From Kudoa neothunni (taxonomy: Eukaryota; Animalia; Cnidaria), in contig OZ199838.1 in the NCBI GenBank assembly GCA_964304625.1, positions 16,145,731 through 16,209,730 of the forward strand: 64,000 nucleotides of DNA, written 5' to 3'. The notes under the pieces were generated by a model. That model saw only the letters and a program-made list of their open reading frames with translations. It searched no databases and was not told the DNA's origin. Both the position numbers and the translations under genes were made by a program. Positions 2,228 to 64,000 of the stretch are shown here, piece after piece. Numbering within the stretch: the stretch's first letter is position 1; every line of letters begins with the position of its first letter.

Positions 2228-5200
2228 ATGAGACAGAGATATTTTGCTATATTATGTCTTTTTGTTTTGACAGGTAATCCCTCCAAATAAATACTATTCT
2301 TATTTTTTTAGTTTTTCACTCTCAGTATGGCTTCAAAAATGATATTGATAATAATATAATGGAATTAAAGTTTTCAAACGATGATAACAAATATCATATT
2401 TCGCTCTCTGGGTATAATATCGAAAATAGCCACAGAAAATGTGCTCTCCAATATTATGATAACATCACTAATGAACTTAAGAAAGTTCCTTCTTGTAAAA
2501 CCGATATATCTAATGCAGTTGAAGATGAAGCAGCTCATATGTGTGCTTATGAATGCAAAAAAGTTACATTGAAATTCAGCGCGGATGAATTTAAAAAAGT
2601 CAAATATTTCAAGTGGTGCCAAGGAAAAAATGATAAGGACGCTAAGAAATGCAATGTTAATAGAGCATTTTCAGTCAGAGGTATTTTAGAAAATTATATA
2701 TAATTTAACGTTTTATTAGATATTTACTTAAAAAGTTATTTAAAAGCGACTAAAGGAATTGATGAATTCACTGTTACGGTTAAAAGCAAAAAAAATAATG
2801 CATTTACTTCAAAAATTGATGGAAAACAAGATCAGGTTCCTGCAACTGAAGGCTTTTATGATGAAAAAAATATAACATTGTACGCTAAATCACATGGTTT
2901 AAAATACGCCATAGAATTTACAAATAATTCACCAGAAATTCAGTTAAACCCCTTAAAGCCAGTAGAAGATTGGTTTATTTCAACTGGATCCGAGCATATA
3001 GTTGGTGATCAATATTATTACTCTATATCTCTTCAAAACCCATTACCTTCGAAAATGTGTTATTTTGGAATAAAACATATGGATGACTCGCTGTTTTCCT
3101 CTTCCTGCTCAGATATGAACAAAGCTGGACCATGTCTCCAGCCTTGTCACAAAGCAACATTAAAATATTGGAAAGAGTTAAAATTTGCACAAGTAATGGT
3201 TAAATCATATGACAACCCAACATCAAAAGAATTTATTCAAACTGTTACATGTAATTTACTTCTTATGTGTATATAATTTTTAACGTAAAATAAGTTAAGA
3301 ATGATCAACCAAAAGCAACGACTACGAATAACCAAGCAACTATTCCTTTAACTAATTTAAATATGAATGAAGATGACACCAATGTTAAACTGGTTCGTCA
3401 ATTAAGGAAATTAAAATAATAAAGAAATTCCTTGGAATTAATGATAATTGGAAAGACCATACATGTATTGACGGATGTACTACAAATTTTGGCTCAATAA
3501 CTATTACCTCATTGGACGACCTAACAGAATATGTTCTCAGAGTTAAAATATCTGGATTAACAACAGTGGATTCTTCTGAAGTTAATTATTATCATAGATA
3601 TTTTTATTTCCAAACAAATGGTACTAATGAATATTTAATGATAATTATATATTTATGGGTAGGAAAGGAATTTTCTGGTTCTAAGAGTATAAAGTTCGCA
3701 ACTATATCAGAAACACATACAAAATTATCTGTTACTCCGTCCCAACTTTTCACTGATGGGGCAAATGTAAATACTAATTGTCAATTATACTACTCAACGA
3801 CAGGGGCTGAGCCCTTGAAACTACCTGCCACATGTGAAATAGGCGAAAATAAAACAATTTTGTTTAGCTAAATGCACTAGCACTTTTAGTGTAGTGAATC
3901 TTGACCCAATGACCAACTATAAATTTACTATTTGTTCTGAAGGATATACGTGCTTTGAGTTCGCCGAAGAGAAAACAAGTAATGTTTATTGTTTTGTTAA
4001 ATAATAAATATTCTTCATAGCAACTGGAGTAACGCCCACAGTTACTCCTGGTAATGATATATCTGCCAAAAAAACAAAGGTTACACTAGGTCCTCAAAAT
4101 GGAATTAATGACAACGCATGGAGATATTTACTTATAGAAAAAACATCAGAAAAAACAGTTAATGATTGTTTAAATTCCGCGTGCAAACCTACAGTAACAT
4201 CTAATGTTCTAAATTTTGATTGGACTGATCTTAATCCTGATCTTACATACAGCATAGTTCTGTTTAACGAAGATTACACTAATCCGAAAATAGCTGATAT
4301 AGAAAGTATTTCTCGATTATTACAAAGTTTGAAACTTTATAGATAATCAGGTGGAAAACATTGGTCCATTAATTCTACAATACGACACATCCACTCAAAC
4401 ATATAATGTAAAATTTAATGAAAGCCCAACAACTTTAATCGATAAAGAATGCAATGTTCAAAAATTTAAGTCAGGGAAAAATATATATGAAGGTGCTGGT
4501 AAAAATATGGGAGAAATTAGAAGAAATTGCAATGAGCTTACAGGATCAACAAATATTAATATTGATATTTCTGATAAGTTGACTTATATTTCTGTCGCTT
4601 ATGAACATACGGAAGTAACGTTGGAAAAATCTTTAAAATCAGGAGTCAAGAAACTCCAAGTTTCTAAATCAATTTTGTTTCATGACGTTCAAAGTCACCC
4701 AGTAATTTCCAAAAAAAGCAAAATAGAAAGAGTTACATTAGGCAAAGAGGAATTAACAGGTATTATTCTTAAGGAACAGAGATGAAGATAATGTTGACAT
4801 AGGTAAAGAACAAAATAAACAGGTAGGAGACAAACATATAACAGCTACAATAAAGGTTGTACCAGATAATCCGCTAACGCCGGAAAAATCTAATCACGTA
4901 ACGCCACAAGTAAAAACTGAACCAGTTATATATCCCAAAGGAAAAGTCTATTCTATTTTTATAGGTAATATAATTAATGTATTGTTGTAATTTTTATTAA
5001 AGATTATTACGAGGAAATAACATTCACTGCATCACATGATGGTGGAAAAATAAAGTTAGGATTGGATAAACGTTCATTAAGCTGTGCTGTGTATAAAGAT
5101 AATGTCCAGGATTCATCTGTAATAGCAGTAGTATCAAATTCCGGCGGTTCTTGTAACTTTGAAAGTTACTCAATTCCATTTACAGAGTTGGTCGAGGACT

Positions 5201-8200
5201 ATTATATAAGCTGTCCGGAACACTTTGATTTTCATTATTATTACGATAATAGTTTCGTAAAAAACCACGCTCCTATATTTAATCGTTTTTACTATGAGTT
5301 GGCTGTTGACGAAGAAAAAAAACAGTTAAAAGTCAAATTAGTCAACAAAGAACCATCTAAAATATGCACGTTTGAATGGATAGACACGACAGCGTCATCG
5401 TCTCTCCAATATTTTTCGAGTGAATGCAAAAACAAAGAAACCTGTTATTATGGCTTGTGTAGTAATATACGTTTCGGCAATGTTGCAGCTGAAGTGAATG
5501 CAATAAAAATACGCGCCCAAAAGCTTGGAATGTCTCCTGTTATTGGTTACCAAAACAACATTTATTTATGTAATTATTATTTATGTGTAACTAAATTATA
5601 TTAGGTTTAGTAAAACATGGAAACGACATATCTGTAAAGACCTCAAATAATAAGGTAACAATTGATATTAGTAATAATAATAAGAAAGAGGATGGTGAAC
5701 AAGTCACTGGATCCACTACAGTGCAGTGTACATTAACGTATTGGAACGCGTATGCTCCTTTGGTTAGCGAAATGGATAGGATAAGCGTCTCCAGTCCAAC
5801 GTGTAATTTCCAAGAATTAGAAATATCACCGGTTGAAACTACTTTGCCAAGTGATATTATGGTTACAGTGACAAATATTCCTAATTATAATCCAAAGAAA
5901 TATTTTTACCATAAAACTAGTATGATTTTGATTACATTATAATAACAATTATTTGTTTAGCTCAAGCAAATACTCTTAGTTTAACTAGCGAATCTGTTAC
6001 TGCTACTGCAAACGGATTCACGTTCATTCCATATTCGACGGCAACAACGAACATATGTAGTATTTACATCAAAGAAACTAAAGCTTCAGAGTATTATCCT
6101 GCTACATGCTCAGGAAACGCATTATGTGTTGGTAATTGCAAAACCTCATCCACAATTGAAGGACTCTATGCTGGTACTAGCTACGATATAATGATTATAC
6201 CTAGTGGAGATTTTGATGTTAAAACCATCAAAAATAAGCAGACATGTACATATTTTAAATATTTTAAGTGATTAAATAAACTTTAGTTGGCAGTACTGTA
6301 AAATTCGAGATTTCCAGTGATTCTACTAAAAATAATCTTAAAGTGGAACCCAACGGAATTATCGACAACCCGAGTGCTACTGAGTGTTACTATCAATTAT
6401 ATAAGCACGAATCAGATACCAGTATTCATTATTATTTATTTGAAAATTTAAAAATTTTAGCTTCACCAACAACAATATTGCAATCATGTATTGGGTGTAC
6501 ATCTAGAAATGAACCTATGAAATGTAATGAAATAGAATTCGGTTCTATTTTATATAATTATAAGAATAATTACCGATTATTGATATATGCAAAAGAAAAA
6601 ACAGCACCATTTAAGCTTGACATACCAGGTTATTTGATAATGATTTACGTTTTATATACATGTGTAGCATTTTCAAGGATGGGAAAAATTCAGCAAAAAG
6701 TTATGGCAGCTGCAACCAACGACATGGAAAAATTTTCTATAACATTATCAGGGTTTACAAATAATTTTAAATGTGCCATTAAAATTTCAAATTTCGACCC
6801 TGTTCCTACCTTTGCCAAACCGACATGTTCATCTAACATTGAAGAAAACGACTGTATTATAGATTGCAGCCGGAGTGATTTCGAAATTGGACATATTAAC
6901 TCAAAAGTTGATCGTTATATTTCAATTTGTTACGGTTCGGATAAAACGAAAGCACAAAGTTGTAGATCAGTTTCTGTTTTTGCCATAAAAATGGGTATAT
7001 TTATTATTAACGTGAATTATTACTTATGATCATGTTACTAATTAATCAATTTTTTAAGATTACTTGCAAAAAAATACATACAAATTGACACATGATGTGG
7101 GGAAAATGAAATTTTTATACAAAACAACATCAAAAACAGATTGGAGTGTTACAGTAGATGGAAACGACGATACTTTTAGTAACTCAGGAAAAACCAGTTT
7201 AAATCAATTAAAAAATTCTGAAACGCCAACAGAAAAATCTGGAGTTTTTTCTATTGAAAGATTTGTGAACTTTTATAAAATTAATTCAACACTTTTGTGG
7301 CCGGGAATCATTTATTATACAAACAACACGTTTTTGAATACAACAACCCCAATAAAGTCCCAAATTATTTATTCTATTTCATCAGTTGACGGAGACAACG
7401 AGAAAATTAATATTACATTCTTTCCCGGACCTTATAATAATGAAATGTGTCATATCAAAGTTTTTGAAGTTGGTACTAGTGGTGCAGACAATGAAAATAT
7501 ATTGAATGAATGTGGAGATAGGTTGGGCGGATGCTATCAACTTTGTCAAGATGGAGTGATTAATTTAACACAGCAATATAATAAAATCGGAGTAATCGTT
7601 AAAAGACGATTTGATAAACAAGAGTTCAAAGAATACTTTAAAAGTAATTAAGAATTATTTTAAAAATTTTATTTTCTTTAGAGGGAGACACTGGATTTTC
7701 ATTGGATGGAATTTCTAGCGCGAGTGTAACGCTCAAGGGGCTGGGAGTTTATAAAACTATTAACAAAGAAAATTTGACTCCTGCCTGTACTATTTATATA
7801 ACGATGGATAATAAAGTTTCCGAAAAAAAGCAGGCTAATTGCGACACAAATCAATGCAACACTGATTGTGATCCGTCGTACACCATTACTGATTTAAATC
7901 CCGGAACAAGTTATATAATTTCAGTTAAAATTACAAATTTGGGATTTACTGGGGATTATATAAGGAAAATGAAATTTAGAACATGTAAATACAGAAAATG
8001 TTATAATTTTTTAAATTTATTTTAGCGGATGGAACAGCGTTACCTGCATCTGAAAAAGAAATTAAAATGAAGTCAGGCGTGGCTTTATTAACACCATTTA
8101 GTGATGACGCTTCCTTGCCAATTTGTAGAATATATATAAAGAAAGAAGGTCTACCACATCCAAAATATATGGCCACGTGTGATGAAATAGGAATTTGCGA

Positions 8201-8643
8201 ACATAGATGTAGCAGTGAATTCAAGATAAATAATCTTGAGATAGGAAAAACCTATGAAGTATTTGTTGATCCTACCGATGGTAATCAGCAATCAATTTAT
8301 AAAATCAAAAGAGGTATTTTTAAAAAATGATTTATTTAACTAAATTTTTTGTAGAAAATGTTGAAACAACCATTACATATAGTTTTAACCATGGGAGCGA
8401 CTTAAAGATTACTGTTAATTTTAATGAAAACAGAGATAGTTCTGTGTGTCCCTTTATGCTTCACGAGAAAACTGAAGCGGATGGGAAGAGACCAACAATT
8501 GTTTGGTGTAATGATGATGAAGATTGTTCGGCTAACAAGTGTGTTATCGATATCAATGGTTATCAAAGGAGAATAATTACATCTTGAATGTGAAAGTGAA
8601 AGACATTTCATTATATAAAAAACATGATATTCCATGTAATTAG
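2228..8643 (+). pseudogene. Family 1 copy A: large secreted Cys-rich FN3-like multi-module protein, frameshifted
   Basis: Signal peptide MRQRYFAILCLFVLT and the same exon structure as copies B and C. Frame-breaking indels relative to B/C lie at ~3385, ~3853, ~4780 and ~8558. Sequencing error cannot be excluded. Confidence 0.7.
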
Positions 8644-11143
8644 TTTTATTATTTTTATGTTATAAAATAATAATATTTTAATGATACCAATAAAAGATGC
8701 AAGAATTATAAAAGCATTAAGGTGATAAAAATTCTGTGTATTTTTTAATAAATGTTTTCTAGTAAATTCATATATTATATAAATTTTGTCAAAATTCATA
8801 TTAGAAGAGGAAAATTTAAGGAGTGAATATTCGAATATTGATATAAACGATATAGTTCAGAAAGTGATAAAAAAGATTGAAGAAGGGTACATAATTTTAT
8901 TTTATTATATTTTCTAATATTTGATTAGTAATTAGTACTTCGGTGATAACTTTGACGTTAAACAATAATTAGAGAGTAAAGATCAGCATGAACATGCCAT
9001 AGCAGAAAGTCGAAACTCGTAAATTCTTTTTTACCTACAAATCTTAACTCTTTTATAGATCACTAAATAGCTACATGTAAATATTGCGTGTGACGATTTA
9101 ATAATATTTTTTAGTTTATATGCCATGATACCGATTGTGACAGTACTGTTGGTTGTGATAGGTATCGGTATTCGAAAGAAATTATCCATAGATACAACTT
9201 ATGATTTGTAACAGATATATTCGAGATTATTTCATTATTTTCAGATTAATTTTATATATATATATATATATTATTCATAGAATATTTTTTGTAGTAACAA
9301 AATCAAAAATCTACCTAAGAAATTACAACATTAATTAAATTTGTTAGTTATTATGTACATGATTAATATTCTTATTTATAAATAGTTACAAATGCATATA
9401 TATTCTAAAAATTTAAACAGCCTCATTTATTAAAAAATTAATATAGAAACCCAATTACATAATATCTCATATAATTAGCATGAGCGACAGTTTTTGGGGT
9501 TCATGTTGAATTATTATATAAAATTATTCAACTAATCATTTAAAGTTACAAATGAATCATTAATTCAAATTAAGAATAATATTTTTTTTAAGTATTCATA
9601 AAGCTAAAAATTATTGTTCGGAATGCAATGATGAAAATTTTTAGCACCCTTTTTTACGTAAGCGCACACAACAACTATTATTTTTTGTGCGTAGAAGATG
9701 TGATAGAAGAATCATATATTAATATCAAAATTCATCGAGGAAATGTTACGTTTATTTAAAAAGATCATTTCAATACCAAAAATCAGCTATAATATGTGAT
9801 TCTATAGGTCAGTTACAGGTCTGAGTAAACTTCTTTGATTTCGTTGCTACAACTCAAGTATAGATGAGATAAATATTAATTTTCTTATTTAAATACGACT
9901 TTAGAAATAATAGAGATAATCATAAAAAGTAACTTGAAGACCCAATAGCCATATTCTTAAATTTATCTATGTATTAATACATATACTTAAAAAATTATCG
10001 GTTAAACCTATTGTTTCAAAACCTCACTATTATTGATTTATATTAAATATCTTCTATTTTATCCATTATTTATAATTATTTTTTTTCTTAATCTCGTCTA
10101 ATTCCCAGTTTTTTCGTTGCGACAGTATTACAATTATTTAAATGTTACGTTTATTGAATAAAATAATTGATTTATTGATGAGGGTAAATATTTGGTAATA
10201 GTACAAAAGTTGTAAAATTCTAATATAATACACTTCTTAAGTATTAAAATATATCTAAGATAGTACGTAATTTACAAAGAATCGAAATATTTTAATACGA
10301 ACAATTATGATTTCCAATGTTTGCCTTATGGATATGCTTATTTCTCCACAATTATTATTTCGCAGTATAAACTAAAGAACTAATAAACAGCAACGTATAA
10401 TGCCAAACTATAATAAAATTTAATGTTTGAATATATATATAGAATATTTCTCTCTTTGGAAAATAGGAATAATCGATTAAATTCTTATGTATGTGTATCA
10501 AAAAATATTAAATTATTTTGTGTGAATTCCGCCTTTCAAAAATTTTACTTATGCTTGGGTATTATTTCAATATTTATCTATTTTTATTGATCTTTATAAA
10601 TTTTACTTGAATGATATATGAGGCCAACGTAAAATTTGAAGATCATTTTTGGGGAAATTTAAAAAATCATTATTCTCACAATCTAGAGCCTAACTGTTGC
10701 AGTGGACGGCGAAAATATATTTATCATCGTAATGGACTTAAGTTGGACACATTAATCTGGTTATGGTTCATTTTCCGTCGATAAGATGCAGAATTAAAAT
10801 TTATTGTACTTATCAATTAAATGTCACTTGTTTAACAAACATTATCATCAGCGATAAACCTCTACAACAGACAATGCACAAAAGTTAATGGAAAATTGGT
10901 TCGTTCGTGTTTTGCGCCAAGAGTGGAACATGACTTTTTATCCGTGTATATACGAAGGTGCATTACGTGATTTGTACTGTAGAATCAAATATCCTCAAAA
11001 ATCATTATATATAAAATGATGGTAAGACACAAAAAGTTTAAATATAAAGTCAAACAATAATTCAAATAACCGATAAACATAATGCTAACTAATTTTAGAA
11101 TTAATAATAATAACTAATCTAAAAGATGGAGTCATAGTATTAA

Positions 11144-13121
11144 TTAACGTTTTTTGTAGCATATTATTATAATAATGAAAACAAATATTATCACGATGGG
11201 TACGACGATTGCTATCACCAAAAATTTTTTCGATTTGGTAGACGAATTTTTTGGGTTGGATTCGGTGGAATTTGTAATATTTGGAGTAGTTGGAGTCTCA
11301 TTTTGGTCTCCTTAGATTGAGTAATAAAATAGTATATATATAATGAAAAAACCTTCAATAAATTTAATATATGTTCGATTATTGGCATAATTTTGTACCC
11401 ATGATGGTAATCTGTTCTAATATTATAATTTATAAATTATACGATATGATAATTATAAAGATACCTCGATTCGAAAAAGGTAATCGATATCTTTTTTCAG
11501 TCCTTGCTCATAAATATATGCAATAAGAGAGTACACATATATCTTCGTCACTATATCCTAAATCTATTGAACATGTATTAGTCCATATTTTATATACTTC
11601 CACATCGTAGGTGTTTGAAGTGATTTTTTTCTTTTATAGACGTGTTTATGTTGGAAAGGTCAGAGAATGAATACAGAGCTAACGTTGGATCATCAATATA
11701 AAACTAAATACACATAATAAATGTATTTTATTTTGATATAAATAAAATAATATCTATGCCTTAAAATAGTTACTTCCCGTTTTTATAGAAAAATCAATTT
11801 TTTTAAACTCAATAGTTTGATCATTCCAAGGGTGAGTTTCATCGAGAATCAACGTTACACTTTCAATAAATTCTAAGCAAGCCTCATAGTTGTAGGAAGC
11901 TACGAATTTTATTTGTCCCAAAAATTTGTTATAATCTTCCAATGTAGATATTAAATTAATATATTCTTCTGTTGATATGGAAATCGTTTCATCCTTGATA
12001 GAACAAGGGAATTTTAAAATAATTGATCCATCTCCCTGATCAACTTCAAATTTATTTTGCTATGAAATGAATTAATTGAAAATTAAATGAATGGATTAAA
12101 TTACAGTTATAAATTTGTAAATCAATCTAGGCAGAATATACTTGTAGCCGTTGGATTTCATATATTTACACAATAAAGAATGTGACGTTGAATTGGCAGA
12201 GAAAACTACAATATCATTATTATCACCATCGTGGTTGTGTATTTCTGTTGGATATCCAATCATTAACAAATCTGCATCCAATGATATATATCCAGCGTCG
12301 TTATATTGCTAATTTTTCAATACAATTATTGATATATTTTTATTTCATTTTAAAATTTAATTCCAAAAATGTTAGTTATAAAAAAACATAATTTCGATTG
12401 ATATTTGTTAAAATTATCAATTACCGTCGTCACATAGAATTTTCTATCACCCTAAACAAAGAATAAAAAACCATTTTATATTTTTATTATGTGGATACTT
12501 CTCTTCTGTATATATTGACAATATTTGAATCCACATAATTAAGAATAATTTTATCATTAGTCGATAATTTGGAATAGGATATTTGTAGAAGTTTATTATC
12601 GAGAGTAACGTTGCGAACGTTGGTACCAAAATCCACCCAATTTAGATAATGCATATTTTTCATTCTATAAAATAATATTAATTTTTCTTTTAGCATTAAT
12701 AGAATATTACGATGATGCAAAATTTTCATCAGAAATCACAACAGTTACGCTAGAGTTTTTGATCCGAACACGTTTTTTTAATATTCCCAAACATTCGTCC
12801 TCAATAACAGTCGCGTTATAAGTGACATTATTTGAATCTTAATTGACTTTTAAATAATTAATGAATAAATATTTAATTACTAGGACAAGGAAATGTTACT
12901 GATTGATCACATTTGACTCCAAAAAACATAAAATGTTCATGTTCACAAACAAATGCTTTAATATTTATTTCTCCATCATCAACATAAATCAATATCTCCT
13001 ATATATGTAATATATTATATTAATAAATTATATTTGTTGTTGCTTTTTTATATTCATCTTCTGAAGCGGATATTACAATATATAAAGTAAATAAAACCAA
13101 CTTCAAGAACCAATATACCAT
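11144..13121 (-). pseudogene. Family 2 copy 1: type I membrane protein, probably disrupted
   Basis: Signal peptide MVYWFLKLVLFTLYIVISA, a Cys-containing ectodomain, S/T/N/P stalk, TM segment FLVIAIVVPIVIIFVFIIIIIC and tail YKKR*. Compared with copy 2 it has a +1 A-run frameshift (~11625) and two GT->GC donors (13043, 11759). Confidence 0.7.
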
Positions 13122-28000: not shown

Positions 28001-28431
28001 AGTGAATTCAAGATAAATAACCTTGAGTTAGGAAAAACCTATAAAGTAATTGTTGAACCTACCGACGGTAATCAGGAATCAATTTATAAAATCAAAAGAG
28101 GTATTTTTAAAAAATGATTTATTTAACTAAATTTTTTGTAGAAAATGTTGAAACAACCATTACATATAGTTTTAACCATGGGAGCGACTTAAAGATTACT
28201 GTTAATTTTAATGAAAACAGAGATAGTTCTGTGTGTCCCTTTATGCTTCACGAGAAAACTGAAGCGGATGGGAAGAGACCAACAATTGTTTGGTGTAATG
28301 ATGATGAAGATTGTTCGGCTAACAAGTGTGTTATCGATATCAATGGGTTATCAAAGGAGAATAATTACATCTTGAATGTGAAAGTGAAAGACATTTCATT
28401 ATATAAAAAACATGATATTCCATGTAATTAG
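22040..28431 (+). CDS. Family 1 copy B: ~1,900 aa secreted protein with repeated Cys-containing FN3-like modules, apparently intact; 3' end uncertain
   Basis: ATG at 22040 gives MRQSYAGLLCLVVLT. GT donors at ~22086, 22495, 23065, 23436, 23793, 24119, 24750, 25356, 25701, 26030, 26206, 26413, 26779, 27431, 27772, 28101 (and possibly 28424) join the track ORFs in frame. FN3-type strands include YTITDLNPGTSYIISVK, FTIEGLYSGTSYDIMI and FTVVNLDPMTNYKFTV. Confidence 0.85.
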
Positions 28432-29071: not shown

Positions 29072-29095
29072 CAGTAGGTAACCGATTTTCCGTAA
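29072..29095 (+). mobile_element. Possible Tc1/pogo-like terminus at the unit 2 breakpoint
   Basis: TA|CAGTAGGTAACCGATTTTCCG resembles pogo/Tigger-type TIR starts and lies exactly where copy B diverges from copy A. No second end seen. Confidence 0.3.
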
Positions 29096-46200: not shown

Positions 46201-49200
46201 CAAGCAAAGAAAATATTAATATTGACATTTCACATAATTTGAATTATATTTCTGTTACATACGAACATACTGAAGAATCGAAGGAAGGAACTTTAACATC
46301 AATAATCCAGAATCTCCAAGTTTCTAGGTCAATTTTATTTCGAGACGTTAAGAGTCTCCCAGTAATTTCTAAAATGAGAAAAATTAAAAAAAGGTCAGTA
46401 GAAGAAAAATTAGATCTGAAAAAGGATGCACAAAGTAATCCGCCGGCATCAGAAAAACCTAAGAAGGAAGAGCATCCAAAAACACCTATACTAATTAAAT
46501 TTCCCAAAGGACGAGTATATTCAATTTTTATAGGTAAAATATAATTAATTCATTATTATAATTATTATTTAAGATTATTACGAGGAGATAACATACACTG
46601 CATCACATGATGGTGGAAAAATAAAATTAGGTTCGAATAGATGTTCATTAAACTGCGGCGCCTATAAAGATAATGTCCATGATTCATCTGTAGAAGAAGC
46701 AAAATCAAGTTCCGACGGTAACTGCAACTTCAAAAGCTACTCAATAACATTTACAGAATTGGTCGAGGACTATTATATAAGCTGTCCTGAACATTTTGAT
46801 TTTCATTACTATTACGATAATAGTTTCGTAAAAAACCACGCTCCTATATTTAATCGTTTTTACTATGAATTGGCTGTTGAGGAAGACAAGAAACAATTCG
46901 AAATAAAATTAGTCAACAAAGAACCATCTGAAATATGCACTTTTGAATGGATAGACACGACAAGCTCATCATCTCTCCAATATTTTTCGAGTGATTGTAA
47001 AAACAAAGATAACTGCTATTATGGCTTGTGTAGTGATATGCGGTTTGAAAATGTTGTAGATACAGTAAAGGCAGTAAAAATACGTGTTCTCAAACTAGGA
47101 ATGTTTCCTGTTATTGGCTACCAAAACAACGTTTATTTATGTAATTATTTTTATTTAAAAATTAAATTATTTTAAACATAGTAAAACATGGAAACGACTT
47201 ATCTGTCATCACCTCAGATAGTAATGTAAAAATTGATATTAGTAATAATAAGAAGATGGAGGATGGTCGACAAGTTACTGGTTCTAACCCCGTGGAGTGT
47301 ACGTTAATGAATTGGAATACGTATGCACCATTAGTTAACGAAAAGGATAGAATAAATATCTCTACTCCAAATTGTATCTTTGGAGAATTAAAAATATCGC
47401 CAGTTCCAAAAACTTTGTCAAATGATATTATGGTCATAGTAACAAATATTCCTAACTATACACCGAGGAAATATTATTACCATAAAATTAGTATGATTTT
47501 GATTATATTGTAATAGTTATTTATTCATTATTTAGCTCAAGTAAATGATCTAATTCCCGGAACTGTTACTGTCACTGCAAACGGATTCATGCTCACTCCA
47601 CATTCGCAAGAAACAACGAGCATATGCAATATCTACATTAAAGAAAAAAAGGCAACAGAGTATTATCCCGCTACATGTTCACAAAACACATTATGTGTTG
47701 GTAATTGCAAAACCTCATTCACAATTGAGGGACTCTATGCTGGTACTAGCTACGATATAAAGATTATACCTAGTGGAGATTATAATGTTAAAACCATCGC
47801 AAATCAGCAGACATGTACATATATTAAGTATTTTAAATGATTGGATTAATTTTAGCTGGTAACATTGTAAAATTCGAGATTTCCAGTGATTCTACTAAAA
47901 ATAATCTTAAAGTTATATCGACAGGAAGTATTATCCCAAGCGATACTGACTGTTACTATCAACTTTATAAGCATGAATCAGATACTAGTAATTAATACTT
48001 TTTAATTCATGATTAAAACAATTTAGCTTCCCCAACAACAATATCAAAGTCATGTGTTGGATGTATATCGGGAGACGAACTTAAGAAATGTAATGATATG
48101 CAGTTTGATTCCACAGTGTATAATCATAACAATAATTACCGCTTATTGATATATGCAAAAGAAAAAATAGCACCATTTAAACTTGACATACCAGGTTATT
48201 TGACGTAGATATACGTTTTGTATATTTATGTAGCATTTTCAAGAATGGGAATGATTAAACAAAAATTTATGGCAGCTACTGGCGATGACATGGAAAAATT
48301 ATCTGTAACATTATCGGGGTTTACAAATAATTTTAAATGTTCCATAAAAATTTCAAATTTCGAGCCTGTTCCCACATTTGCCAAGCCGACATGTTCATCT
48401 AATATTGTCGAAAACGACTGTATTATAGATTGCAGCCGGAGTGATTTCGAAATTGGACATATTAACTCAAAAGTTGATCGTTACATTTTGATTTGTTATG
48501 GGTCAAACAATGATAAAGCAAAAATATGCAGGTCACCTTCTGTTTATGCCATAAAAATGGGTATATTCATTATTAACGTGCATTATTATTTATGATCATT
48601 TTACAAATTAATCAATTTTTTAAGATTACTCGCAAAAAAATACGTACAAACTGGCATATGAGGAGGGGGGAATGAAATTTTCATACAAAACAACATCAAA
48701 AACAGATTGGATTGTTACAGTAGATGGCAGAGAAGATACTTTTAGTAACACAGAAAAAGAAATGTTGAATCATTCAAATTATTTGGACGCCCCAGTGGAA
48801 AAATCTGGCGTTTTTTCGATTGATAGATATATGAACTTTTATACAATTAATTCCACACTTTTGTGGCCGGGAATCATTTATTATACAAACAACACGTTTT
48901 TGAATACAACAACCCCAATAATGTCCCAAATTATTTATTCTATTTCAGCAGTTGATGGAGACAACAAGAAAATTAATATTACATTCTCTCCCGGACCTCA
49001 CAATAATGAAATGTGTTATATCAAAGCTTTTGAAGTTGGTACTAGTGGTGATGACAATGAAAAGATATTAAATGAATGTGGAGTTGGGTTGGGCGGTTGT
49101 TATCAACTTTGTCAAGATGGAGTGATTAATTTAACACAGCAATATAATAAAATCGGAGTAATCGTTAAAAGACGATTTGATAAACAAGAGTTCAAAGAAT

Positions 49201-50805
49201 ACTTTAAAAGTAATTAAGAATTATTTTAAAAATTTTATTTTCTTTAGAGGGAGACACTGGATTTTCATTGGATGGAATTTCTAGCGCGAGTGTAACGCTC
49301 AAGGGGCTGGGAGTTTATAAAACTATTAACAAAGAAAATTTGACTCCTGCCTGTACTATTTATATAACGATGGATAATAAAGTTTCCGAAAAAAAGCAGG
49401 CTAATTGCGACACAAATCAATGCAACACTGATTGTGATCCGTCGTACACCATTACTGATTTAAATCCCGGAACAAGTTATATAATTTCAGTTAAAATTAC
49501 AAATTTGGGATTTACTGGGGATTATATAAGGAAAATGAAATTTAGAACATGTAAATACAGAAAATGTTATAATTTTTTCGATATAATTTAGTGGATGGAA
49601 CAACGTTATCTGCATCTGGAAAAGAAATTAAAATGAAGTCAGGCGTGGCTTTATTAACACCATTCAGTGATGATCCTTCCTTGCCAATTTGTAGAATATA
49701 TATAAAGAAAGAAGGTCTACCACATCCAAAATATATGGCCACGTGTGATGAAATAGGAATTTGCGAACATAGATGTAGCAGTGAATTCAAGATAAATAAT
49801 CTTGAGATAGGAAAAACCTATAAAGTAATTGTTGAACCTACCGACGGTAATCAGCAATCAATTTATAAAATCAAAAGAGGTATTTTTAAAAAATGATTTA
49901 TTTAACTAAATTTTTTGTAGAAAATGTTGAAACAACCATTACATATAGTTTTAACCATGGGAGCGACTTAAAGATTACTGTTAATTTTAATGAAAACAGA
50001 GATAGTTCTGTGTGCCCCTTTATGCTTCACGAGAAAACTGAAGCGGATGGGAAGAGACCAACAATTGTTTGGTGTAATGATGATGAAGATTGTTCGGCTA
50101 ACAAGTGTGTTATCGATATCAATGGGTTATCAAAGGAGAATAATTACATCTTGAATGTGAAAGTGAAAGACATTTCATTATATAAAAAACATGATATTCC
50201 ATGTAATTAGTTTTATTATTTTTATGTTATAAAATAATAATATTTTAATGATACCAATAAAAGATGCAAGAATTATAAAAGCATTAAGGTGATAAAATTC
50301 TGTGTACTTTTTAATAAATGTTTTCTAGTAAATTCATATATTATATAAATTTTGTCAAAATTCATATTAGAAGAGGAAAATTTAAGGAGTGAATATTCGA
50401 ATATTGATATAAACGATATAGTTCAGAAAGTGATAAAAAAGATTGAAGAAGGGTACATAATTTTATTTTATTATATTTTCTAATATTTGATTAGTAATTA
50501 GTATTTTTGTGATAACTTTGGCGTTATAAAATAATTAGAGAGTAAAGATCTGCATGAGCATACCATAGCAGAAAGTCGAAACTCGTAAATTCTTTTTTAT
50601 CTACACATTTTAACTCGTTCATAGATCACTGAATAGCTACATGTAAATATTTATACGACGATTTAATAATATTTTTTAGTTTATATGCTATGATACCGAT
50701 TGGGACAGTATTATTAGTTGTGATAGGTATCGGTATAAGAAAGAAATTATCCATAGATACAACTTATGATTTGTAACAGATATATTCGAGATTATTTCAT
50801 TATTC
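43225..50805 (+). repeat. Tandem segmental duplication unit 3 (family 1 gene only)
   Basis: Homology to units 1 and 2 ends at ~50805 (after gattatttcattatt); no minus-strand family 2 copy follows. Confidence 0.85.
43879..50210 (+). CDS. Family 1 copy C, apparently intact; 3' end uncertain
   Basis: ATG at 43879 gives MRQRYFAILCLFVFT. Exons are collinear with B, and the frame is open at the four positions where A is broken. Confidence 0.85.
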
Positions 50806-56084: not shown

Positions 56085-59000
56085 ATGATTAATATATTGA
56101 ATTTTTTGATTTGGTATGTCTGTTTCAATACTATTTCTCCAAATGAGTTAAACGAAGAAACCACAAGAGTAATTTTACATAAAAAATAATACATTTTTAT
56201 GTTGATATAGGAGATCCTGTTATATGTGAAGTTTGAAGCATTCTATGCTCAATTATATGATTGCAACCCGGAGACAAATAGTTTCTTTGGAGTTTATTGT
56301 CACCTTAACCAATCCATAGGTTGTCCTAGTATTATATTGATTTATTTGTACAATATTCAACAAAATATCTAGAATTCAATAGTAATGACGAAGAAAGGGT
56401 TGAAGTAGAAAATAGCTGCTTAAAACTTGTTATAAGTGTGTTGAACCATCTCGTCAACCCAAACGTAACGATTATGGTGGCCAACGAAAATTTTGAATCA
56501 AAGTAATTTATTTTTATCTAGGGCAAACGAGATTGTGATAAGCTATATCACATAGGATTCGTAGTGATTATTACTTGGGCTTGTTAAAATATGAGGGTAA
56601 AATAAGAAGCGAGATGATCAATGGAAAAAATCTAAGAATACAATATTCGGAACCTACCACCTCACAAATAATATTCTATACATATATAAAATCAAATGAA
56701 AAAACCACTCAAACGGAATCAGTATACTTATTTTTCTGAAATCCATTTTTATTAATATTTATATTGTATAGGAAGCAGATGAATTAACCAACGAAAGAGT
56801 AAAATATTAATATTTTTATTAATGTTATTAAAGGCGTAAATAATGTTATATATATATATATGTTAAAATTAAAAATATAACTATTTTCGGGCATTTATAT
56901 TATGTTAGACTTATCAAGATTATGGTTATATGTGTTTGGAGGATGAGGTGTTTATGATTGGATACACTACAGAAAGTGATCAAATAAATGAAGCCACGTC
57001 TACATACACGGCGAATTCCGTACAGTATCCATTTTTCTCAACCTACATAAAACCTATGGGATTTAAATATATTCTTTGCAAAATTATAACGAAACTTATA
57101 ATGGTATTTTAATTTTAAATTAAGGATCGTAGTTTTCGATTTTAGTCGTCGAATTTTAAAAATAACTTCGACGTTAATTTTCACCGAAAATTTGAAATGG
57201 GCAAGAGCCGGAGAGAAATTATTACTTTTCTCGTTTAATAGATCGACATAGAGCAGATGGAAAATGAAATTGCTTGTATATATTGTAACGTGAAATTATC
57301 TCTACAACTGAATAGAATTTACGTGAAAATAATATAAAAAAAAAAGTTAACCTTATAAGTACCTGAAAAATTTACACCCTCCGAATAAAAATTAAAAATG
57401 GGATGGAAATATACTCCACGTTTTTATCTAAAAAAATTGTCTCAAATAAAATTCAGCATTTACTGGCAAAATATGAGGAAAATTCATCATATACATTTTG
57501 AATAAATGACCAATTATTAAAGTTTTATTCCATATACACATGCGCATAAATTTATGTTTTTACATTTCCACGGAGTATGATTGTTTCTAAGGTGTATTTC
57601 TGCGTATTTTTAATTTTACCGTTTAATTCAAGTTCCAAAACACCTGTAAAATTATTTTTCTTATTTTAAACAACGCGGTGTAAAACTCGACTGAAAATCA
57701 TATAATGATGGAAAACAGTGCATATTTCGCAAAAAAAAAATTAACAGATATTTTTTTAAAATCTTCAAAATGTTGAATTATTATATCATATGTTTTCGAA
57801 TTCTTCCTGCAACGCTGAACGAAGCAACCTAATGAAAACTCATACTTTGAATAATTATTTAAGAATAAAGAGAGAATGAAGAGCTGTCGTTGGGTTCTGA
57901 GGAGGGTAACATGTTTATATCGATTTGGCGTATACGGGCGGGAATCGAGTGCAAAATCTTTCGTTATTTATTCTTTATTTACTCGATTGAATTTTCCAAA
58001 ATTATTAAAAATGATGTGTATCAATATTTTTATTAATTTTATTTGAAGGTGTTTTTACATTAATTTTTTTGATATGTGTTGAAAAATATTTCAATTCATC
58101 TTTTTGTAGGCTTTAATAAAAATAGATGATTATAAAAACTGGAGAGGTGTTATGTCCCATTAATACGTTATAACAATGTTGTCAAACTTCACATGAGGTA
58201 AAAATCTACCCTATGTTTCTTAGAGGATTAAAAAACGCTTCAAGACACTTCTTTGCCAGTTATTTTTGTAGAGATAGAAAACAGACAAATTTGATTTCTT
58301 TCTTTTATTGTTCTCAACGTTCCTCCACTATCATTATTTGATAAGAAAAGATGTTGTGAGGAGCTCATTTCAAACTTTTTTAATTGAAATGTTTAATTAT
58401 TAACGCATGCATAATACTTACTATTGGAGCAACCAAAATAAACGTCTTAAACTACGATCCCTATTTATAAATTATATTTGATTGTAAATCGACGACTCAA
58501 TTTTTTAGCTCGAAAAATATGAAGAAACTCAAGATGAAATAACCATTGAATTTCCTTGCTCATTAGCAACAAAAAGAATAGAAATCTCTAGAGACGATTG
58601 TGATGGTTGGATATCAAATGTTGAGGAAGAATATGACAAAATTTTTAAACCCATCAATATCGTATCTACTTATAAATTAGAAACCTGCATAGAACTAATC
58701 AATTCGGTTGCATTAACCCTTAATGACACTCATCCTTGGAATAGACAAACGAGAGATTTCTTCGAAATAAAATTTCCGAAAAAAATTGGAAGCAGTTCCT
58801 TCAACGTATGACCCTATATAACATACTTGCGCGTAAAGCCGGCCTTGCTTCGGATCGAGCTTATTAACCCTCTAACGATTTTTGGGTAAATTTTACCTCA
58901 GAGCGATTTTGTATTGAGCATATCTTTTTATTTTAATTATTAAATCTCACCAAATTTTCGTTATTCCTATAACTTATAATGATTTACTTTTACTAAACAA

Positions 59001-61063
59001 ATTGGGAATAAATAATGAAAAGAACAAATTTTATACAAATATTATCGTCTAACGTTCTTTGGGGTAAAATTTACCCAACTTTTTTATTACTTTAATCTAA
59101 AGAGTATCTTGTAAGTAATCATATATTACATAAATAATATAATCGAACGAGTAGATTTGAAGAAAACAATGAATAAAATGACTAATTTTGCCATTGCGCA
59201 TGCGCACGATGTGCATAATTCTAGATGAATGACACGATTAATTTCATTGCGAATTGGACTATCAAGTTATTGATGAAAGTGATATAACGGACGAATATGT
59301 ATATATCCCGTAGATATAAATGATAATAACTTTAAAATTAAAAGTGGAATTATTTGGAGTTTATCGAAGTTATCTACAAGAAAACATTGTTCCGAAAACA
59401 TAAAGAATTCCATCCTCAGTGCTTTATCGTATGATGTATCAAATATAAAATCATTCATTTTTCTTCTATCTTATTCTGTACCTCAGAAGTCGGTAATATT
59501 ATCATAAAGTATGCAAAAATGGGCTTGGAAATCACTATTTCGATGATGAGTGACATGATACCAATAAAATTGATTTTAAAGGTTTTTTAAACGTTCTAAT
59601 ACCAATAGCTCTCGATAAAGATAGACAAGTCTCACTGATAATACTGTCATCGATGCGTCTAAAAATTTAAAACCACATACGATAATGATCATGCATTACA
59701 ATGCAACAATGAGTGGGGTTGATAATATGGATAGAATGTTGGCATCATTTTCTACACAGAAGATTAAAAGAAGATGGTCATTAATCGTCTTTTTCAACAT
59801 GAATGATATCTCATTGATTAATGCTTTTGCATTATTCTATGGCATATTTAATTCAGATAATAAATTGAGTAGAAACATTCTGAAAGAAATTTCTGAAGAA
59901 TTGTACAATTCACTGTAAATAGAACCTCCAGAAAAGTTATCAAAAGAAATTCAAATAAATCTTATATTCGAATAAAGAACCAAGTTATAATAAAAATGGT
60001 CGCGCTGAGATTATTGTGAATGATTAAATGATAAGAGAATCTCTAAATGGTGTCCTAATTGCTACAAATTTTATTTCTCGATTCATACGTCGAAATTTTT
60101 TTAATGTTACAAAATTAATTGTTGTTCTTATTTCCGCTATTTTTTAATTTTTAATGAGTTTTTTATCAACCAAAAACGTTATTTTTATTTGGTAAACACC
60201 TACGGAGAACGTCGATATATCCCTACAATGTCATAATCGAGATTAGTTTGAGATTATTTAGCATAATTAATACAATATTTCAATGATTCTACACGTTTAT
60301 ATTTGAAAGTATTTTATATTCCACAATTAATTATTTTTTTATACACTTCTGCACAATAAAAAAGTGGTGTAATTTTTACCCCAAAAGTGTTAAAGGGGTA
60401 ACGTTTTTGAGATCGTTAGAGGGTGAAATTTAGAAAATGATATTTAAGCGATAAAATTTTAATCATAAATAGATTCATGGCATTCAATCAGATTCAATTG
60501 ATTTGTTGTATGATTTGGAAAGTGCTAAAACATTAATAAATAATGAAAATCACGAATCAAGTTCAAATATGGAGGTAATAATTCTATTGGAATAAAGTTT
60601 ATATAGGCATATAGGAAACGTTGTATAGAGTTTATTACTACGCTCTAATTGTCTACATTTCGAAAAATATGGAGACCGATGACAATAAACAATACGCATT
60701 TAAAGTAAGAACTATAACTAATTATTTTCGTACATAAACATATTATACCAGGCAGACATTCCGGCATGGCAACCCGAATTTATTGGTGCACTTACTGCGC
60801 CAAAATTATCCAAAAGTAATTGAAGATCTTTTTTATAAATTAAAGGATGACAAAAATTATTAGAAAAAAGCGATAATAATGAGGATCCGAATACCGTTAA
60901 AGTAGTAGCTGAATCCTCTAAAAACAACCATACGAACTATTCAAATAAAGTTTTGGCTGTGGTGGTTACTGTCGTCGTCTTGATAATAATAACTGGCATT
61001 GTGATTGGTCTTTTTGTCAAATACAAAAGGTCAAGGACAGGCAAAGTTAATTTCAATGAATGA
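56085..61063 (+). CDS. Family 2 copy 3 (divergent paralog); two introns expanded by transposon insertions
   Basis: Leader MINILNFLIWYVCFNTIS. Exons EILLYV..DC..FFGVYC..CP, NVTIMVANENF, CLEDEVFMIGYTTE, IEFPC..CIELINSV..DTHPWN (58509-58805) and TM VLAVVVTVVVLIIITGIVIGLFV-KYKR..NE*. Intron positions match the other copies. Confidence 0.75.
57121..58463. mobile_element. Non-autonomous TIR element (hAT-like ends) inside a family 2 intron
   Basis: 15-bp TIRs TAAGGATCGTAGTTT / AAACTACGATCCCTA. It sits between an exon donor (~57104) and acceptor (58508) where paralogs have a ~40-50 nt intron. TSD is imperfect. Confidence 0.7.
58868..60423 (+). mobile_element. piggyBac relic (family P3) inside a family 2 intron
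   Basis: TTAA|CCCTCTAACGAT ... ATCGTTAGAGGG|TGAA. Transposase remnant HYNATMSGVDNMDRML..RRWSLIVFFNMNDISLINAF (59685-59918). Confidence 0.85.
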
Positions 61064-62575: not shown

Positions 62576-64000
62576 ATGTTCTGTTGGATAATTTTCTCGA
62601 TCATAATTTTTTACATTCCCAAAGTATTTGGAGAGCTTGATAAGAAAAAAGTAAATATTTTGTTTATTAATATCAATATCTAATTTTCATAGGAAGTTTT
62701 GCTTTATATGTATTATGGTATTATCCAAATGGAATCGTATATATGTGAAATGGATAAAACTAAATTTTTCGGAGTAAACTGTACGTTCAAGAAACTACAT
62801 AAATGCAGTAATATTTTAATTAAAAAATGGAGTGTTATTTTGATCAAAGGGATAACTGTTGTGTTGGATACTAATGTTGATCTTGAAAATGAATGCCTAA
62901 AACAGTTTAACAAAGAATTCAGACTAATAAATACAAATGTATGGGTAATAGTAGCTGATGAAAATCTACGTAGCTCGTAATTATGTCAATCAAATATGGA
63001 CTTGTCTAATTTTCGTTTATAAAGTTTGAGAAGTAAATATTATGAAAATTATACTGATTTTGGAATTAATGTTCGCAACGTAACCATTGATGACAACAAT
63101 ATAACAATTTCCTATTGGAAACTTACAGAAAAAGGAGAAACTCTATTACAATATGTCGAATCTAATGAGTCACCGATACTAATCGGAAAGGTAAATTTCA
63201 AATTTATATCTTATAATTCTCATTCTATTTAGGGACATGAATCTTATACTCACGAGAGAGTAAATTATTTATTGAATAAATTTATTTTCTAATTTCATTT
63301 TTTAAATAAATATATGATAATTGTTTATTTTATAGGAATACAAAGATTGTGGATATATTCTAATCGATTACGATTTATTTTCACTCGGCTATCCCACAGA
63401 AAAGGACATAACAAACAATACAATAACTAGCTATATCTTTAATGGGAAAGAATTTAATTTTTTCTCAAAAAGTTTTGACAAAATGGGTTATAATAATTTG
63501 TTTTATAAACTAATTTATCAACTTATATTGGTAATTTTTTATATTTATTATTCTGTTTCATTTAATTTTGATACTTATTAGCTTGGAAAATATAACACCA
63601 TTCCGGGAAGTAATGTAATCACCATGGAATTTCCCTGTTATCATCTAAATACATCCATTACGTTTTTTCCCATTCAATATAAGAGTTGGATATCAAAATT
63701 AGAGGGCAGCCACGAAAAATTTTTGGAGCGAATTAATTTAACTGCCGGATATAGTTTTTTAGGATGCTTAGAGTTGATAAACTTAGTTACGTTTTTCCCA
63801 AATCATAGATATCCATGGAATAATAACATAGTTAATTTATTGGAAACGAAGCTTCCGAAGAAAGCTGGCACACCTTGTTTCGATGTAATAAATGTTATAA
63901 AATTGGAAACAAATTATAATTTAATCAATTACTAGGTTTATGGCTATGTATATAGTTTGATTAAGCATGATGATTACTATTCAATGGAATATTTAAATAA
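62576..64000 (+). CDS. Family 2 copy 4 (divergent paralog), 3'-partial
   Basis: Leader MFCWIIFSIIIFYIPKVFG. Exons EVLLYM..ICE..FFGVNC..KC, NVWVIVADENL, DFGINVRNVTID and MEFPC..WISKLE..CLELINLV..YPWN are homologous to copies 1-3. Confidence 0.8.

What the first reader, a model, noticed from the sequence alone, without database searches (positions are those of the whole stretch)
2228..64000. Candidate variant surface/recognition locus: a mosaic secreted FN3-like gene co-amplified with a novel type I membrane protein family
Seen: two unrelated secretory-pathway gene families I cannot name account for nearly all recognisable host genes after COX15. The giant family 1 gene and a family 2 membrane gene lie tail-to-tail and were duplicated together (period ~20-22 kb). 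Two more divergent family 2 paralogs follow the third family 1 copy. Both families show localized amino-acid variation. Known: linked, diversifying ectodomain arrays are typical of parasite variant-antigen loci and invertebrate allorecognition complexes. Inference: this may be an undescribed ligand/anchor or antigen system in which the membrane protein tethers or senses the secreted multi-module protein.
Basis: partly seen in the sequence, partly recalled or inferred. Interest (0 to 1): 0.85.

Follow-up and report, generated by a model that had tools for sequence, protein, structure and literature searches.

The report
Two unlinked parasite surface-protein gene families
The repeated genes are real, but they mark the spot where a three-copy cluster of one very large surface-protein family happens to abut a roughly 25-gene array of a second, orphan membrane-protein family in a fish-muscle parasite. 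Nothing indicates that the two proteins work as a pair.

Summary
Observation: largely confirmed. After COX15 the window holds three tandem copies (period 19.8 and 21.8 kb) of a ~2,000-aa gene built from Cys-rich FN3-like modules. Two tail-to-tail copies of a ~400-aa type I membrane gene (family 2) were duplicated with it. Two more diverged family 2 genes lie at the right end.

Corrections:
- Family 1 is not secreted. Four micro-exons and a conserved TM exon (…YDL*) follow the last module in all 27 paralogues examined elsewhere in the genome.
- Copy 1 of family 1 and copy B of family 2 carry frameshifts, so each "pair" has one broken partner.
- The two right-hand family 2 genes begin a tandem array of about 20 further family 2 genes, covering about 150 kb, that contains no family 1 gene.
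- Of 64 family 1 genes found genome-wide, only the three here lie within 20 kb of a family 2 gene. The others are at least 97 kb away.
- Mosaic variation fits gene conversion (dS runs from 0 to >1 along the gene; overall dN/dS is 0.43), not focused diversifying selection.

Family 2 is an orphan. It has no Pfam or PDB match, and its only outside homologue sits on two short metagenome contigs.

Verdict: lineage-specific surface-protein arrays in what is probably Kudoa neothunni. The ligand/anchor idea is not supported. No RNA evidence exists.

The parts
41..1181 (+). 3' part of a COX15/CtaA gene (three exons, short introns). It is the left neighbour and not part of the repeat.
   Evidence: Pfam PF02628, E 2e-34 and 6e-22. 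Sequence read.
2228..9211 (+). Family 1 copy 1 (c1): a Cys-FN3-like type I membrane protein gene, probably a pseudogene. It has 1-nt frameshifts at 3383, 3850 and 8557, and a complex frame break at about 4740-4850.
   Evidence: Gene models and three-way alignment. TM exon at about 9115-9211.
11144..13121 (-). Family 2 copy A: an intact 406-aa type I membrane glycoprotein. My exon model (9 exons) is 13121-13077, 12998-12881, 12837-12711, 12664-12499, 12451-12425, 12308-12105, 12059-11774, 11678-11598 and 11310-11144. Its features are a hydrophobic N-terminus, 10 NxS/T sites, an S/T/N/P-rich stalk, a TM segment and a YKKR tail.
   Evidence: Manual model. ORF check. Exon conservation against the array.
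18835..19035 (-). hAT transposase remnant (C-terminal dimerisation domain) in the spacer of unit 1.
   Evidence: Pfam PF05699, E 1.4e-8.
22040..28997 (+). Family 1 copy 2 (c2): intact, 21 exons, 2,017 aa. Exons 1-16 each carry one or two modules, separated by phase-1 introns of 26-64 nt. The stalk micro-exons are 28485-28508, 28592-28672, 28760-28805 and 28846-28863. The TM/tail exon is 28901-28997 (…ILYAMIPIGTVLLVVIGIGIRKKLSIDTTYDL*).
29072..33474 (.). A 4.4-kb insertion present only in unit 2. It contains a frameshifted piggyBac-type transposase (30431-31464, - strand).
   Evidence: Self-BLAST gap. Pfam PF13843, E 5e-41 and 2e-13.
34461..36434 (-). Family 2 copy B: 97% identical to A but probably a pseudogene. 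The exon 6 donor is changed GT>GC, and a 1-nt deletion in exon 7 removes the TM exon from the frame.
   Evidence: A/B alignment and translation. Split exon 7 HSPs.
43879..50776 (+). Family 1 copy 3 (c3): intact, 21 exons, 1,994 aa. No - strand family 2 gene follows it.
56330..61060 (+). Family 2 paralogue C, the first gene of the + strand array. Exons E3-E5 lie at 56330-57109, E6 at 58509-58808 and the TM exon at 60851-61060. A 1.4-kb insertion and a piggyBac fragment (59625-59915) interrupt it.
   Evidence: tblastn, open frames, Pfam PF13843 E 1e-6.
62693..64000 (+). Family 2 paralogue D (E2-E6; it runs off the window). About 20 more paralogues follow every 5-12 kb.

Best explanation
The window is the junction of two independent, lineage-specific surface-protein gene arrays, in a 40-Mb, 4-contig, AT-rich animal genome that matches the published Kudoa neothunni assembly.

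Family 1 is a subfamily of about 65 genes, part of a larger family, for ~2,000-aa type I membrane proteins. Its parts are:
- a signal peptide;
- about 16 exon-encoded modules, many of them FN3 folds stiffened by four conserved cysteines;
- a ~60-aa stalk encoded by micro-exons;
- a TM segment;
- a 12-aa tail ending in Y[DE]L.

Family 2 is an orphan family of at least 31 genes for ~400-aa type I membrane glycoproteins. Each has a non-FN3 alpha/beta ectodomain, a mucin-like stalk of variable length, a TM segment and a 4-10-aa basic tail.

A ~20-kb segmental duplication at the edge of the family 2 array copied one family 1 gene together with one inverted family 2 gene. A further duplication copied family 1 alone. 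Afterwards:
- non-allelic gene conversion among the three family 1 copies, and possibly from distant paralogues, produced the mosaic of identical and very divergent tracts;
- transposon insertions and frameshifts began to erode copies (family 1 c1, family 2 B and C).

This is ordinary birth-and-death evolution.

Shown: the anatomy, family sizes, lack of genome-wide linkage, FN3 fold, TM anchoring, mosaic structure and frame breaks.
Inferred: surface location, and a role as the parasite's adhesion or coat proteins facing host tissue.
For: - Triplication and mosaic. For example, 2487-3234 is 100% identical between c1 and c2, 7564-7864 is 100% identical between c1 and c3, and 4426-4876 is 43-78% in all pairs.
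- Gene models are complete for c2 and c3.
- The TM exon is conserved in all 27 paralogue loci examined elsewhere in the genome. Among the three window copies, by my reading of the alignment, changes in it are almost all synonymous (about 6 synonymous against 1 replacement).
- FN3 fold: AF2 pLDDT 88.8 with seven strands. The top Foldseek PDB hits are nearly all FN3 domains or FN3-derived scaffolds (NCAM, tenascin, PTPRF, monobodies), at TM 0.55-0.70. The module profile hits tenascin, fibronectin, titin and Dscam at E 6e-4 to 8e-3. Pfam fn3 is found in 9 of 37 modules.
- Family sizes: 31 E6 hits for family 2. For family 1, 64-66 loci each for exons 6, 14 and 15.
- Linkage: only 3 of 64 family 1 genes lie within 20 kb of a family 2 gene. 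About 20 further family 2 genes lie on the + strand out to ~208 kb in window coordinates, with no family 1 gene among them.
- Decay: c1 frameshifts; B frameshift, and exon identity 97.4% equal to intron identity 97.1%.
- Selection: dN/dS 0.43 with dS from 0 to >1.
- Family 2 is an orphan: no Pfam hit, one hit among 1.84 billion representatives, no PDB or Atlas fold match.
- Organism and assembly quality: PMC12239612 describes three chromosomes plus a mitochondrial genome, QV 48.5, 49-nt introns and 26% intronic GC. It does not mention these families.
Against: - No RNA or protein evidence exists. The two RNA runs laid held no reads of this organism. All splice models are therefore computational.
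- Surface location and function rest on architecture alone.
- The family 2 counts come from one exon at E<=1e-3. Very diverged members next to other family 1 genes could have been missed.
- The frameshifts in c1 and B could be assembly errors. This is unlikely at QV 48.5, but the paper says coverage was low.
- The public-run contigs I laid over the near-identical parts of copy 1 carried the letters of copies 2/3 and B. Copy-specific read support for c1 and A in those parts was therefore not obtained.
Confidence: 0.75

Rival explanations
1. Programmed antigenic variation. Family 1, perhaps with family 2, is a variant surface antigen repertoire. One or a few genes are expressed at a time, and gene conversion shuffles a hypervariable module (exons 5-6) onto a constant stalk to evade fish antibodies.
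For: - The family is large.
- Conversion tracts are clear.
- Exon 6 is only 41-56% identical among the tandem copies, and is as close to a paralogue on another chromosome (C3:10402186, 45%) as to its neighbours.
- The 3' cassette is constant.
- Antigenic variation is reported for some myxozoans, with the mechanism unknown (preprint 10.64898/2026.02.11.705288).
Against: - There are no expression data.
- dN/dS is below 1 nearly everywhere, and the variable tracts have equally high dS.
- No expression site was identified in the window. The locus lies about 0.95 Mb from the contig end, so it is not subtelomeric.
- Earlier follow-ups on sister arrays also found nothing that shows switching (s1-701596, s1-701629).
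Confidence: 0.12
2. Functional ligand/anchor pair. The small family 2 membrane protein tethers or senses the large family 1 protein, and the pair is co-amplified because they work together.
For: The tail-to-tail arrangement is duplicated once, as units 1 and 2. Both products would enter the secretory pathway.
Against: - Family 1 has its own conserved TM anchor.
- 61 of 64 family 1 genes have no family 2 gene within 97 kb, and 27 of 31 family 2 genes have no family 1 gene within 20 kb.
- Copy 3 has no partner.
- In each pair one partner is frameshifted.
- A and B show no excess exon conservation over introns.
Confidence: 0.04
3. Assembly artefact. Units 1 and 2 are divergent haplotypes of one locus placed in tandem. 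The published assembly reports haplotypic duplication before purging.
For: - Family 2 A and B are 97% identical.
- c1 and c2 share 100%-identical tracts.
- Contigs from the public runs laid on copy 1 carried the letters of copies 2/3 and B wherever the copies are nearly identical.
- The genome paper describes low coverage.
Against: - There are three copies, not two.
- The units differ by a 4.4-kb transposon, by many indels and by tracts of only 43-80% identity.
- The sequence is contiguous, with no N in 243 kb.
- One run holds 82% of the 31-mers sampled from copy 1 (4000-13500), much of which is only 70-90% identical to the other copies.
Confidence: 0.07

Closest known systems
Metazoan FN3-repeat cell-surface and ECM proteins (tenascin, fibronectin, NCAM/Dscam, receptor PTPs, titin)
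   Same: - Seven-strand FN3 fold.
- The E-F strand signature L..G..Y.v.V.
- One module per exon with symmetric phase-1 introns.
- Type I membrane topology.
   Different: - Four conserved cysteines in the B strand and the C-E loop region.
- Scores fall below the Pfam fn3 gathering threshold.
- No Ig, EGF or catalytic domains.
- The tail is only 12 aa and ends in YDL.
- About 65 or more paralogues in a 40-Mb genome.
- Several 180-230-aa exons have halves that match nothing.
Parasite variant surface antigen families (Giardia VSP, Plasmodium var/rif/stevor, Trypanosoma VSG; VSP- and RIFIN-like genes reported in Sphaerospora molnari)
   Same: Large lineage-specific families of single-pass surface proteins in tandem arrays, with mosaicism driven by gene conversion and very short cytoplasmic tails.
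   Different: - The domains are FN3-like rather than CXXC, DBL or VSG folds.
- There is no evidence of exclusive expression, an expression site or subtelomeric placement.
- The weak Pfam RIFIN hits (E 0.013-0.018) cover only the stalk/TM segment and are compositional.
Hydractinia allorecognition complex (Alr genes)
   Same: A cnidarian cluster of polymorphic type I membrane proteins with tandem beta-sandwich ectodomains.
   Different: From general knowledge, not tested here: Alr ectodomains are Ig/V-set-like, many have signalling motifs in long tails, and their function depends on allelic polymorphism in a colonial animal. Here the domains are FN3, the tails are 4-12 aa, and the organism is an endoparasite. 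Polymorphism could not be tested.
Sialomucin-type type I glycoproteins (CD34/podocalyxin, endomucin, dystroglycan stalk), as an analogue for family 2
   Same: A Ser/Thr/Asn/Pro- or acidic-rich stalk of variable length, then a TM segment and a short basic tail. Pfam hits are sub-threshold and confined to this part.
   Different: The ~300-aa N-terminal ectodomain (exons E2-E6; motifs FPC, HPWN, FPxKxG) has no detectable relative or known fold.

Membership tests
FN3 domain (Pfam PF00041, fibronectin type III) | A ~90-100-aa, seven-strand beta-sandwich. | tested here: met
   AF2 model of exon 15: pLDDT 88.8, seven strands. The best PDB matches are nearly all FN3 domains or FN3-derived scaffolds, at TM 0.55-0.70, probability 1.0, E 6e-3 or weaker.
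FN3 domain (Pfam PF00041, fibronectin type III) | Sequence match to the family profile at its curated threshold. | tested here: not met
   The best single exon scores 21.4 bits against a cut-off of 25. 9 of 37 modules reach E<=0.01, the best at 6.7e-6. The module profile hits tenascin-R, fibronectin, titin and Dscam at E 6e-4 to 8e-3. This is a divergent FN3-like module, not a canonical member by score.
FN3 domain (Pfam PF00041, fibronectin type III) | Conserved tyrosine and leucine of the E-F region. | tested here: met
   L70, G73 and Y76 are invariant in 37 modules.
Variant surface antigen system | A large paralogous family of surface proteins. | tested here: met
   64-66 loci each for exons 6, 14 and 15. 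Signal peptide and TM segment are read from the sequence.
Variant surface antigen system | Mutually exclusive or switching expression. | not testable with these tools
   No RNA reads of this organism were in the runs laid. The genome paper reports very few transcriptome reads.
Variant surface antigen system | Diversifying selection on exposed parts. | tested here: not met
   c2 against c3: dN/dS 0.43 overall. Only a few isolated 40-codon windows reach 1 or more. Variable tracts have dS of 0.8 to >2.
Linked ligand-receptor or partner gene pair | The partners are adjacent wherever the families occur. | tested here: not met
   3 of 64 family 1 genes and 4 of 31 family 2 genes have the other family within 20 kb, and all of them are in this window.
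Linked ligand-receptor or partner gene pair | Both partners of a duplicated pair are kept intact. | tested here: not met
   c1 is frameshifted while A is intact. c2 is intact while B is frameshifted.
Linked ligand-receptor or partner gene pair | Physical interaction or co-expression. | not testable with these tools
   The joined spliced proteins have no reference, so they could not be given to the fold tools. No RNA data exist.
Type I single-pass membrane protein (both families) | An N-terminal hydrophobic signal, one C-terminal TM helix, and basic residues after it. | tested here: met
   - Family 1: MRQSYAGLLCLVVLT… at the start and …IPIGTVLLVVIGIGIRKK… at the end.
- Family 2: MVYWFLKLVLFTLYI… at the start and …FLVIAIVVPIVIIFVFIIIIICYKKR* at the end.
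These are read by eye. No signal-peptide predictor was available.

The most novel reading that the evidence does not exclude
The ~65-gene Cys-FN3 family has one hypervariable module (exons 5-6), a gene-conversion mosaic and an invariant stalk/TM/YDL cassette. It could be the repertoire of a true antigenic-variation system in an animal (a myxozoan). The adjacent orphan family 2 array could be a second, independent coat component.
Probability: 0.1. Interest if true: 0.8.

Novelty: new member of a known kind. Interest (0 to 1): 0.35.

Why it matters
Myxozoans such as Kudoa spoil fish flesh and cause food-borne illness. What they display on their surface is almost unknown. The published K. neothunni annotation was built from protein hints, and its paper never mentions these families.

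This work gives usable gene models for both families:
- Family 1: 21 exons, including micro-exons and two unusual introns.
- Family 2: 9 exons.

It also gives the first description of family 2, which has at least 31 members, mostly in one ~150-kb array.

It removes a tempting but unsupported "co-evolving pair" story. Such adjacency should be tested genome-wide before it is given a functional meaning.

These proteins are reasonable candidates for diagnostic or vaccine antigens once expression is shown.

Tried and rejected
- RNA evidence. Two metatranscriptomic runs carrying the same species label as the best holder (coded 'organism A', probably the host fish) held no reads on 7250-13249. This is no test.
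- Read support for copy 1. The public-run contigs laid on 7851-8937 and 10170-12971 proved to be copies 2/3 and B (8/8 and 31/32 diagnostic letters). They neither confirm nor refute the c1 frameshifts.
- A simple 'secreted' end for family 1 (an in-frame TAG right after exon 16). Rejected: that donor position is not conserved, whereas T|GTAA, four micro-exons and the TM exon are.
- A plain GT-AG model for introns 17 and 18. Every alternative gave a stop codon. Only G|GT…AG|TAA… nested introns keep the frame.
- Family 2 homology. There was nothing usable from Pfam on all exons, a PDB profile search, ESM Atlas by features (scores 0.80, noise), an AF2 model of exon E6 (pLDDT 70) against PDB (Z 2.2) and the Atlas (TM<0.5), or hhalign against the family 1 module.
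- Read-through of the E5-E6 intron, to fold a longer piece by reference. Every paralogue has stop codons there.
- Family 1 outside this genome. The word-indexed search with the module alignment found nothing at 1e-5.
- Fetching flanks of dispersed family members.
- Joined (spliced) proteins were built only inside scripts, for ORF checks and dN/dS. All searches were made exon by exon, by reference.
Full report
**What is in the sequence**

The window is AT-rich (GC 22-35%) and holds genes with very short GT-AG introns.
- 1901-9293 ~ 21746-29071 ~ 43568-50804, at 83-90% identity.
- 10157-14225 ~ 33475-37545, at 95% identity.
- The periods are 19,845 and 21,822 bp.

The left neighbour is COX15 (PF02628). 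The extra length of unit 2 is a 4.4-kb insertion (29072-33474) that carries a frameshifted piggyBac-type transposase. A hAT remnant sits at 18835-19035.

**Family 1**

I built models with a splice-aware dynamic-programming script, then refined them by hand against paralogues. Copies 2 and 3 are complete, with 21 exons each:
- c2 is 22040-28997 and encodes 2,017 aa.
- c3 is 43879-50776 and encodes 1,994 aa.

Exons 1-16 are separated by phase-1 introns of 26-64 nt, and each carries one or two modules.

The ~95-105-aa modules have four conserved cysteines and the L..G..Y.v.V signature. Several lines support an FN3 fold:
- AlphaFold2 on exon 15, with 37 paralogous modules, gives pLDDT 88.8 and a seven-strand sandwich.
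- Its best PDB matches are nearly all FN3 domains or FN3-derived scaffolds, at TM 0.55-0.70.
- The module profile hits tenascin, fibronectin, titin and Dscam.
- Pfam fn3 is found, below its threshold, in 9 of 37 modules.

"FN3-like" is therefore right at the fold level.

"Secreted" is wrong. I fetched 30 loci through the genome search: the three window copies and 27 paralogues elsewhere in the genome. In all of them, exon 16 is followed about 470-490 nt later by a conserved exon that encodes a TM helix and a 12-aa tail ending in Y[DE]L*. Between the two lie four conserved micro-exons. Among the three window copies the TM exon differs almost only at synonymous sites.

Two of the introns in this stretch keep the reading frame only if they are read as G|GT…AG|TAA…. 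That is an intron nested inside the donor of another intron.

**Family 2**

Copy A (13121-11144, - strand) gives an intact 406-aa model. Its features are:
- a hydrophobic N-terminus;
- 9 cysteines;
- 10 NxS/T sites;
- an S/T/N/P-rich stalk;
- a TM helix;
- a YKKR tail.

Exons E2-E6 are conserved in paralogues. The motifs are FPC, HPWN and FPxKxG. The last exon of many paralogues is a low-complexity stalk of 30-230 aa plus a TM segment and a short basic tail.

Nothing known resembles the ectodomain:
- Pfam found no family.
- A PDB profile search found nothing.
- An exhaustive HMMER search of 1.84 billion representatives gave one hit. It is an 82-aa ORF on two short metagenome contigs with 29% GC, which carry E3-E6 in the same order. 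The family therefore exists in at least one other organism, presumably related.
- The AF2 model of E6 is only moderate (pLDDT 70, alpha/beta). It matches no solved or Atlas structure.
- It is unrelated to the family 1 module.

**Are the two families a pair?**

The window is G000:C1:16145731-16209730, in a genome of 40.26 Mb on 4 contigs.

Family 2 (exon E6) has 31 loci:
- the two - strand copies in the window;
- about 22 + strand copies spaced every 5-12 kb, from window position 56.9 kb to about 208 kb (the first two lie inside the window);
- one more about 170 kb beyond the array (C1:16527793), and nine scattered on the three large contigs.

Family 1 exons 6, 14 and 15 each detect 64-66 loci on all three large contigs.

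Only the three family 1 genes in this window have a family 2 gene within 20 kb. The other 61 are 97 kb to several Mb from any family 2 gene. The long family 2 array contains no family 1 gene.

Within the duplicated pairs, one partner is broken each time:
- c1 has 1-nt frameshifts at 3383, 3850 and 8557, plus a complex break near 4740-4850, while A is intact.
- c2 is intact, while B has a GT>GC donor change and a 1-nt deletion that takes the TM exon out of frame.
- A and B are as similar in introns (97.1%) as in exons (97.4%).

The published assembly has QV 48.5, so several indel errors in 7 kb are unlikely. I could not check copy-specific reads. The contigs I laid turned out to be the other copies.

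**Mosaic and selection**

Identity among the three copies switches partner along the gene:
- c1 = c2 at 100% over 2487-3234.
- c1 = c3 at 100% over 7564-7864.
- c2 ~ c3 at 99% over 6517-6817.
- All pairs are 43-79% over 4426-4876 and 5624-6067.

Between c2 and c3, dS runs from 0 to >1, and overall dN/dS is 0.43. Only a few isolated 40-codon windows reach 1 or more.

Exon 6 of c2 is as close to a paralogue on another contig (45% over its full length) as to c1 and c3.

This is the signature of non-allelic gene conversion on an old duplication, possibly with ectopic donors. It is not the signature of focused positive selection. It agrees with the earlier follow-ups on sister arrays (s1-692986, s1-701596, s1-701629).

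**Organism and literature**

Earlier notes name Kudoa neothunni. The published assembly (PMC12239612) fits the genome here. It was built from HiFi and Hi-C data of an infected Thunnus albacares. It has three chromosomes plus a mitochondrial genome, 49-nt introns, 26% intronic GC and 46% repeats. I did not verify the identification by a marker gene.

That paper was annotated from protein hints. It contains no occurrence of "fibronectin", "surface" or "gene famil". Searches for myxozoan FN3 families found nothing relevant. A Sphaerospora molnari preprint reports VSP- and RIFIN/STEVOR-like families and cites evidence of antigenic variation in some myxozoans. The weak RIFIN hits I obtained cover only the stalk/TM part and are compositional.

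**Verdict**

The interpretation survives only as "undescribed surface-protein families with mosaic variation". The co-amplified ligand/anchor system is not supported.

The scan had already followed up family 1 on other DNA. This report adds:
- the anatomy of family 2;
- its size and orphan status;
- the genome-wide linkage test;
- complete gene models.

**Limits**
- No RNA or protein evidence exists.
- Spliced proteins were assembled only inside scripts.

Noticed in passing
window 28509-28591 and 28673-28759 (c2); the same places in c1 and c3, and in loci L022-L048: Two consecutive introns of family 1 keep the reading frame only if each is read as G|GT…AG|TAA…AG, that is, an intron nested in the donor of another ([D1,2] stwintron-like). 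The motifs GGT[AG]A and TAGTAA are conserved in 12 diverged paralogues.
   Followed up: partly
window 28485-28863: The ~60-aa stalk of family 1 is encoded by four micro-exons of 24, 81, 46 and 18 nt. They are conserved across paralogues, and an annotation built from protein hints would miss them.
   Followed up: partly
L049 1-1158 and L050 1-707 (ENA metagenome contigs ERZ28624939 and ERZ4740346): The only outside homologue of family 2 lies on two 99%-identical short contigs with 29% GC, from two metagenome assemblies. They carry exons E3-E6 with short introns. This is probably another Kudoa-like parasite hidden in metagenome data.
   Followed up: partly
window 30431-31464 (-), 59625-59915 (+), 18835-19035 (-): Remnants of piggyBac-type (PF13843) and hAT (PF05699) transposases lie between the surface-protein genes and inside them. 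One piggyBac insertion accounts for the longer period of unit 2.
   Followed up: yes
window 11147-11311 (-) and 60851-61060 (+): The stalk/TM exons of family 2 give sub-threshold Pfam hits to RIFIN, CD34/podocalyxin, endomucin and dystroglycan, confined to the TM region. This is a compositional effect. It may be worth bearing in mind when RIFIN/STEVOR-like genes are reported in other myxozoans.
   Followed up: no
G000:C1:16209731-16353400 (right of the window; loci L001-L017): A tandem array of about 20 family 2 genes, all on the + strand and 30-45% identical in exon E6. Their stalk exons vary greatly in length (30-230 aa, acidic or Ser/Asn-rich).
   Followed up: partly
window 24158-24748 (c2 exon 6) and G000:C3:10402186-10402761: The most variable family 1 exon is as similar to a paralogue on another chromosome as to its tandem neighbours. 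This suggests ectopic gene conversion, or long retention of divergent versions of this one module.
   Followed up: partly
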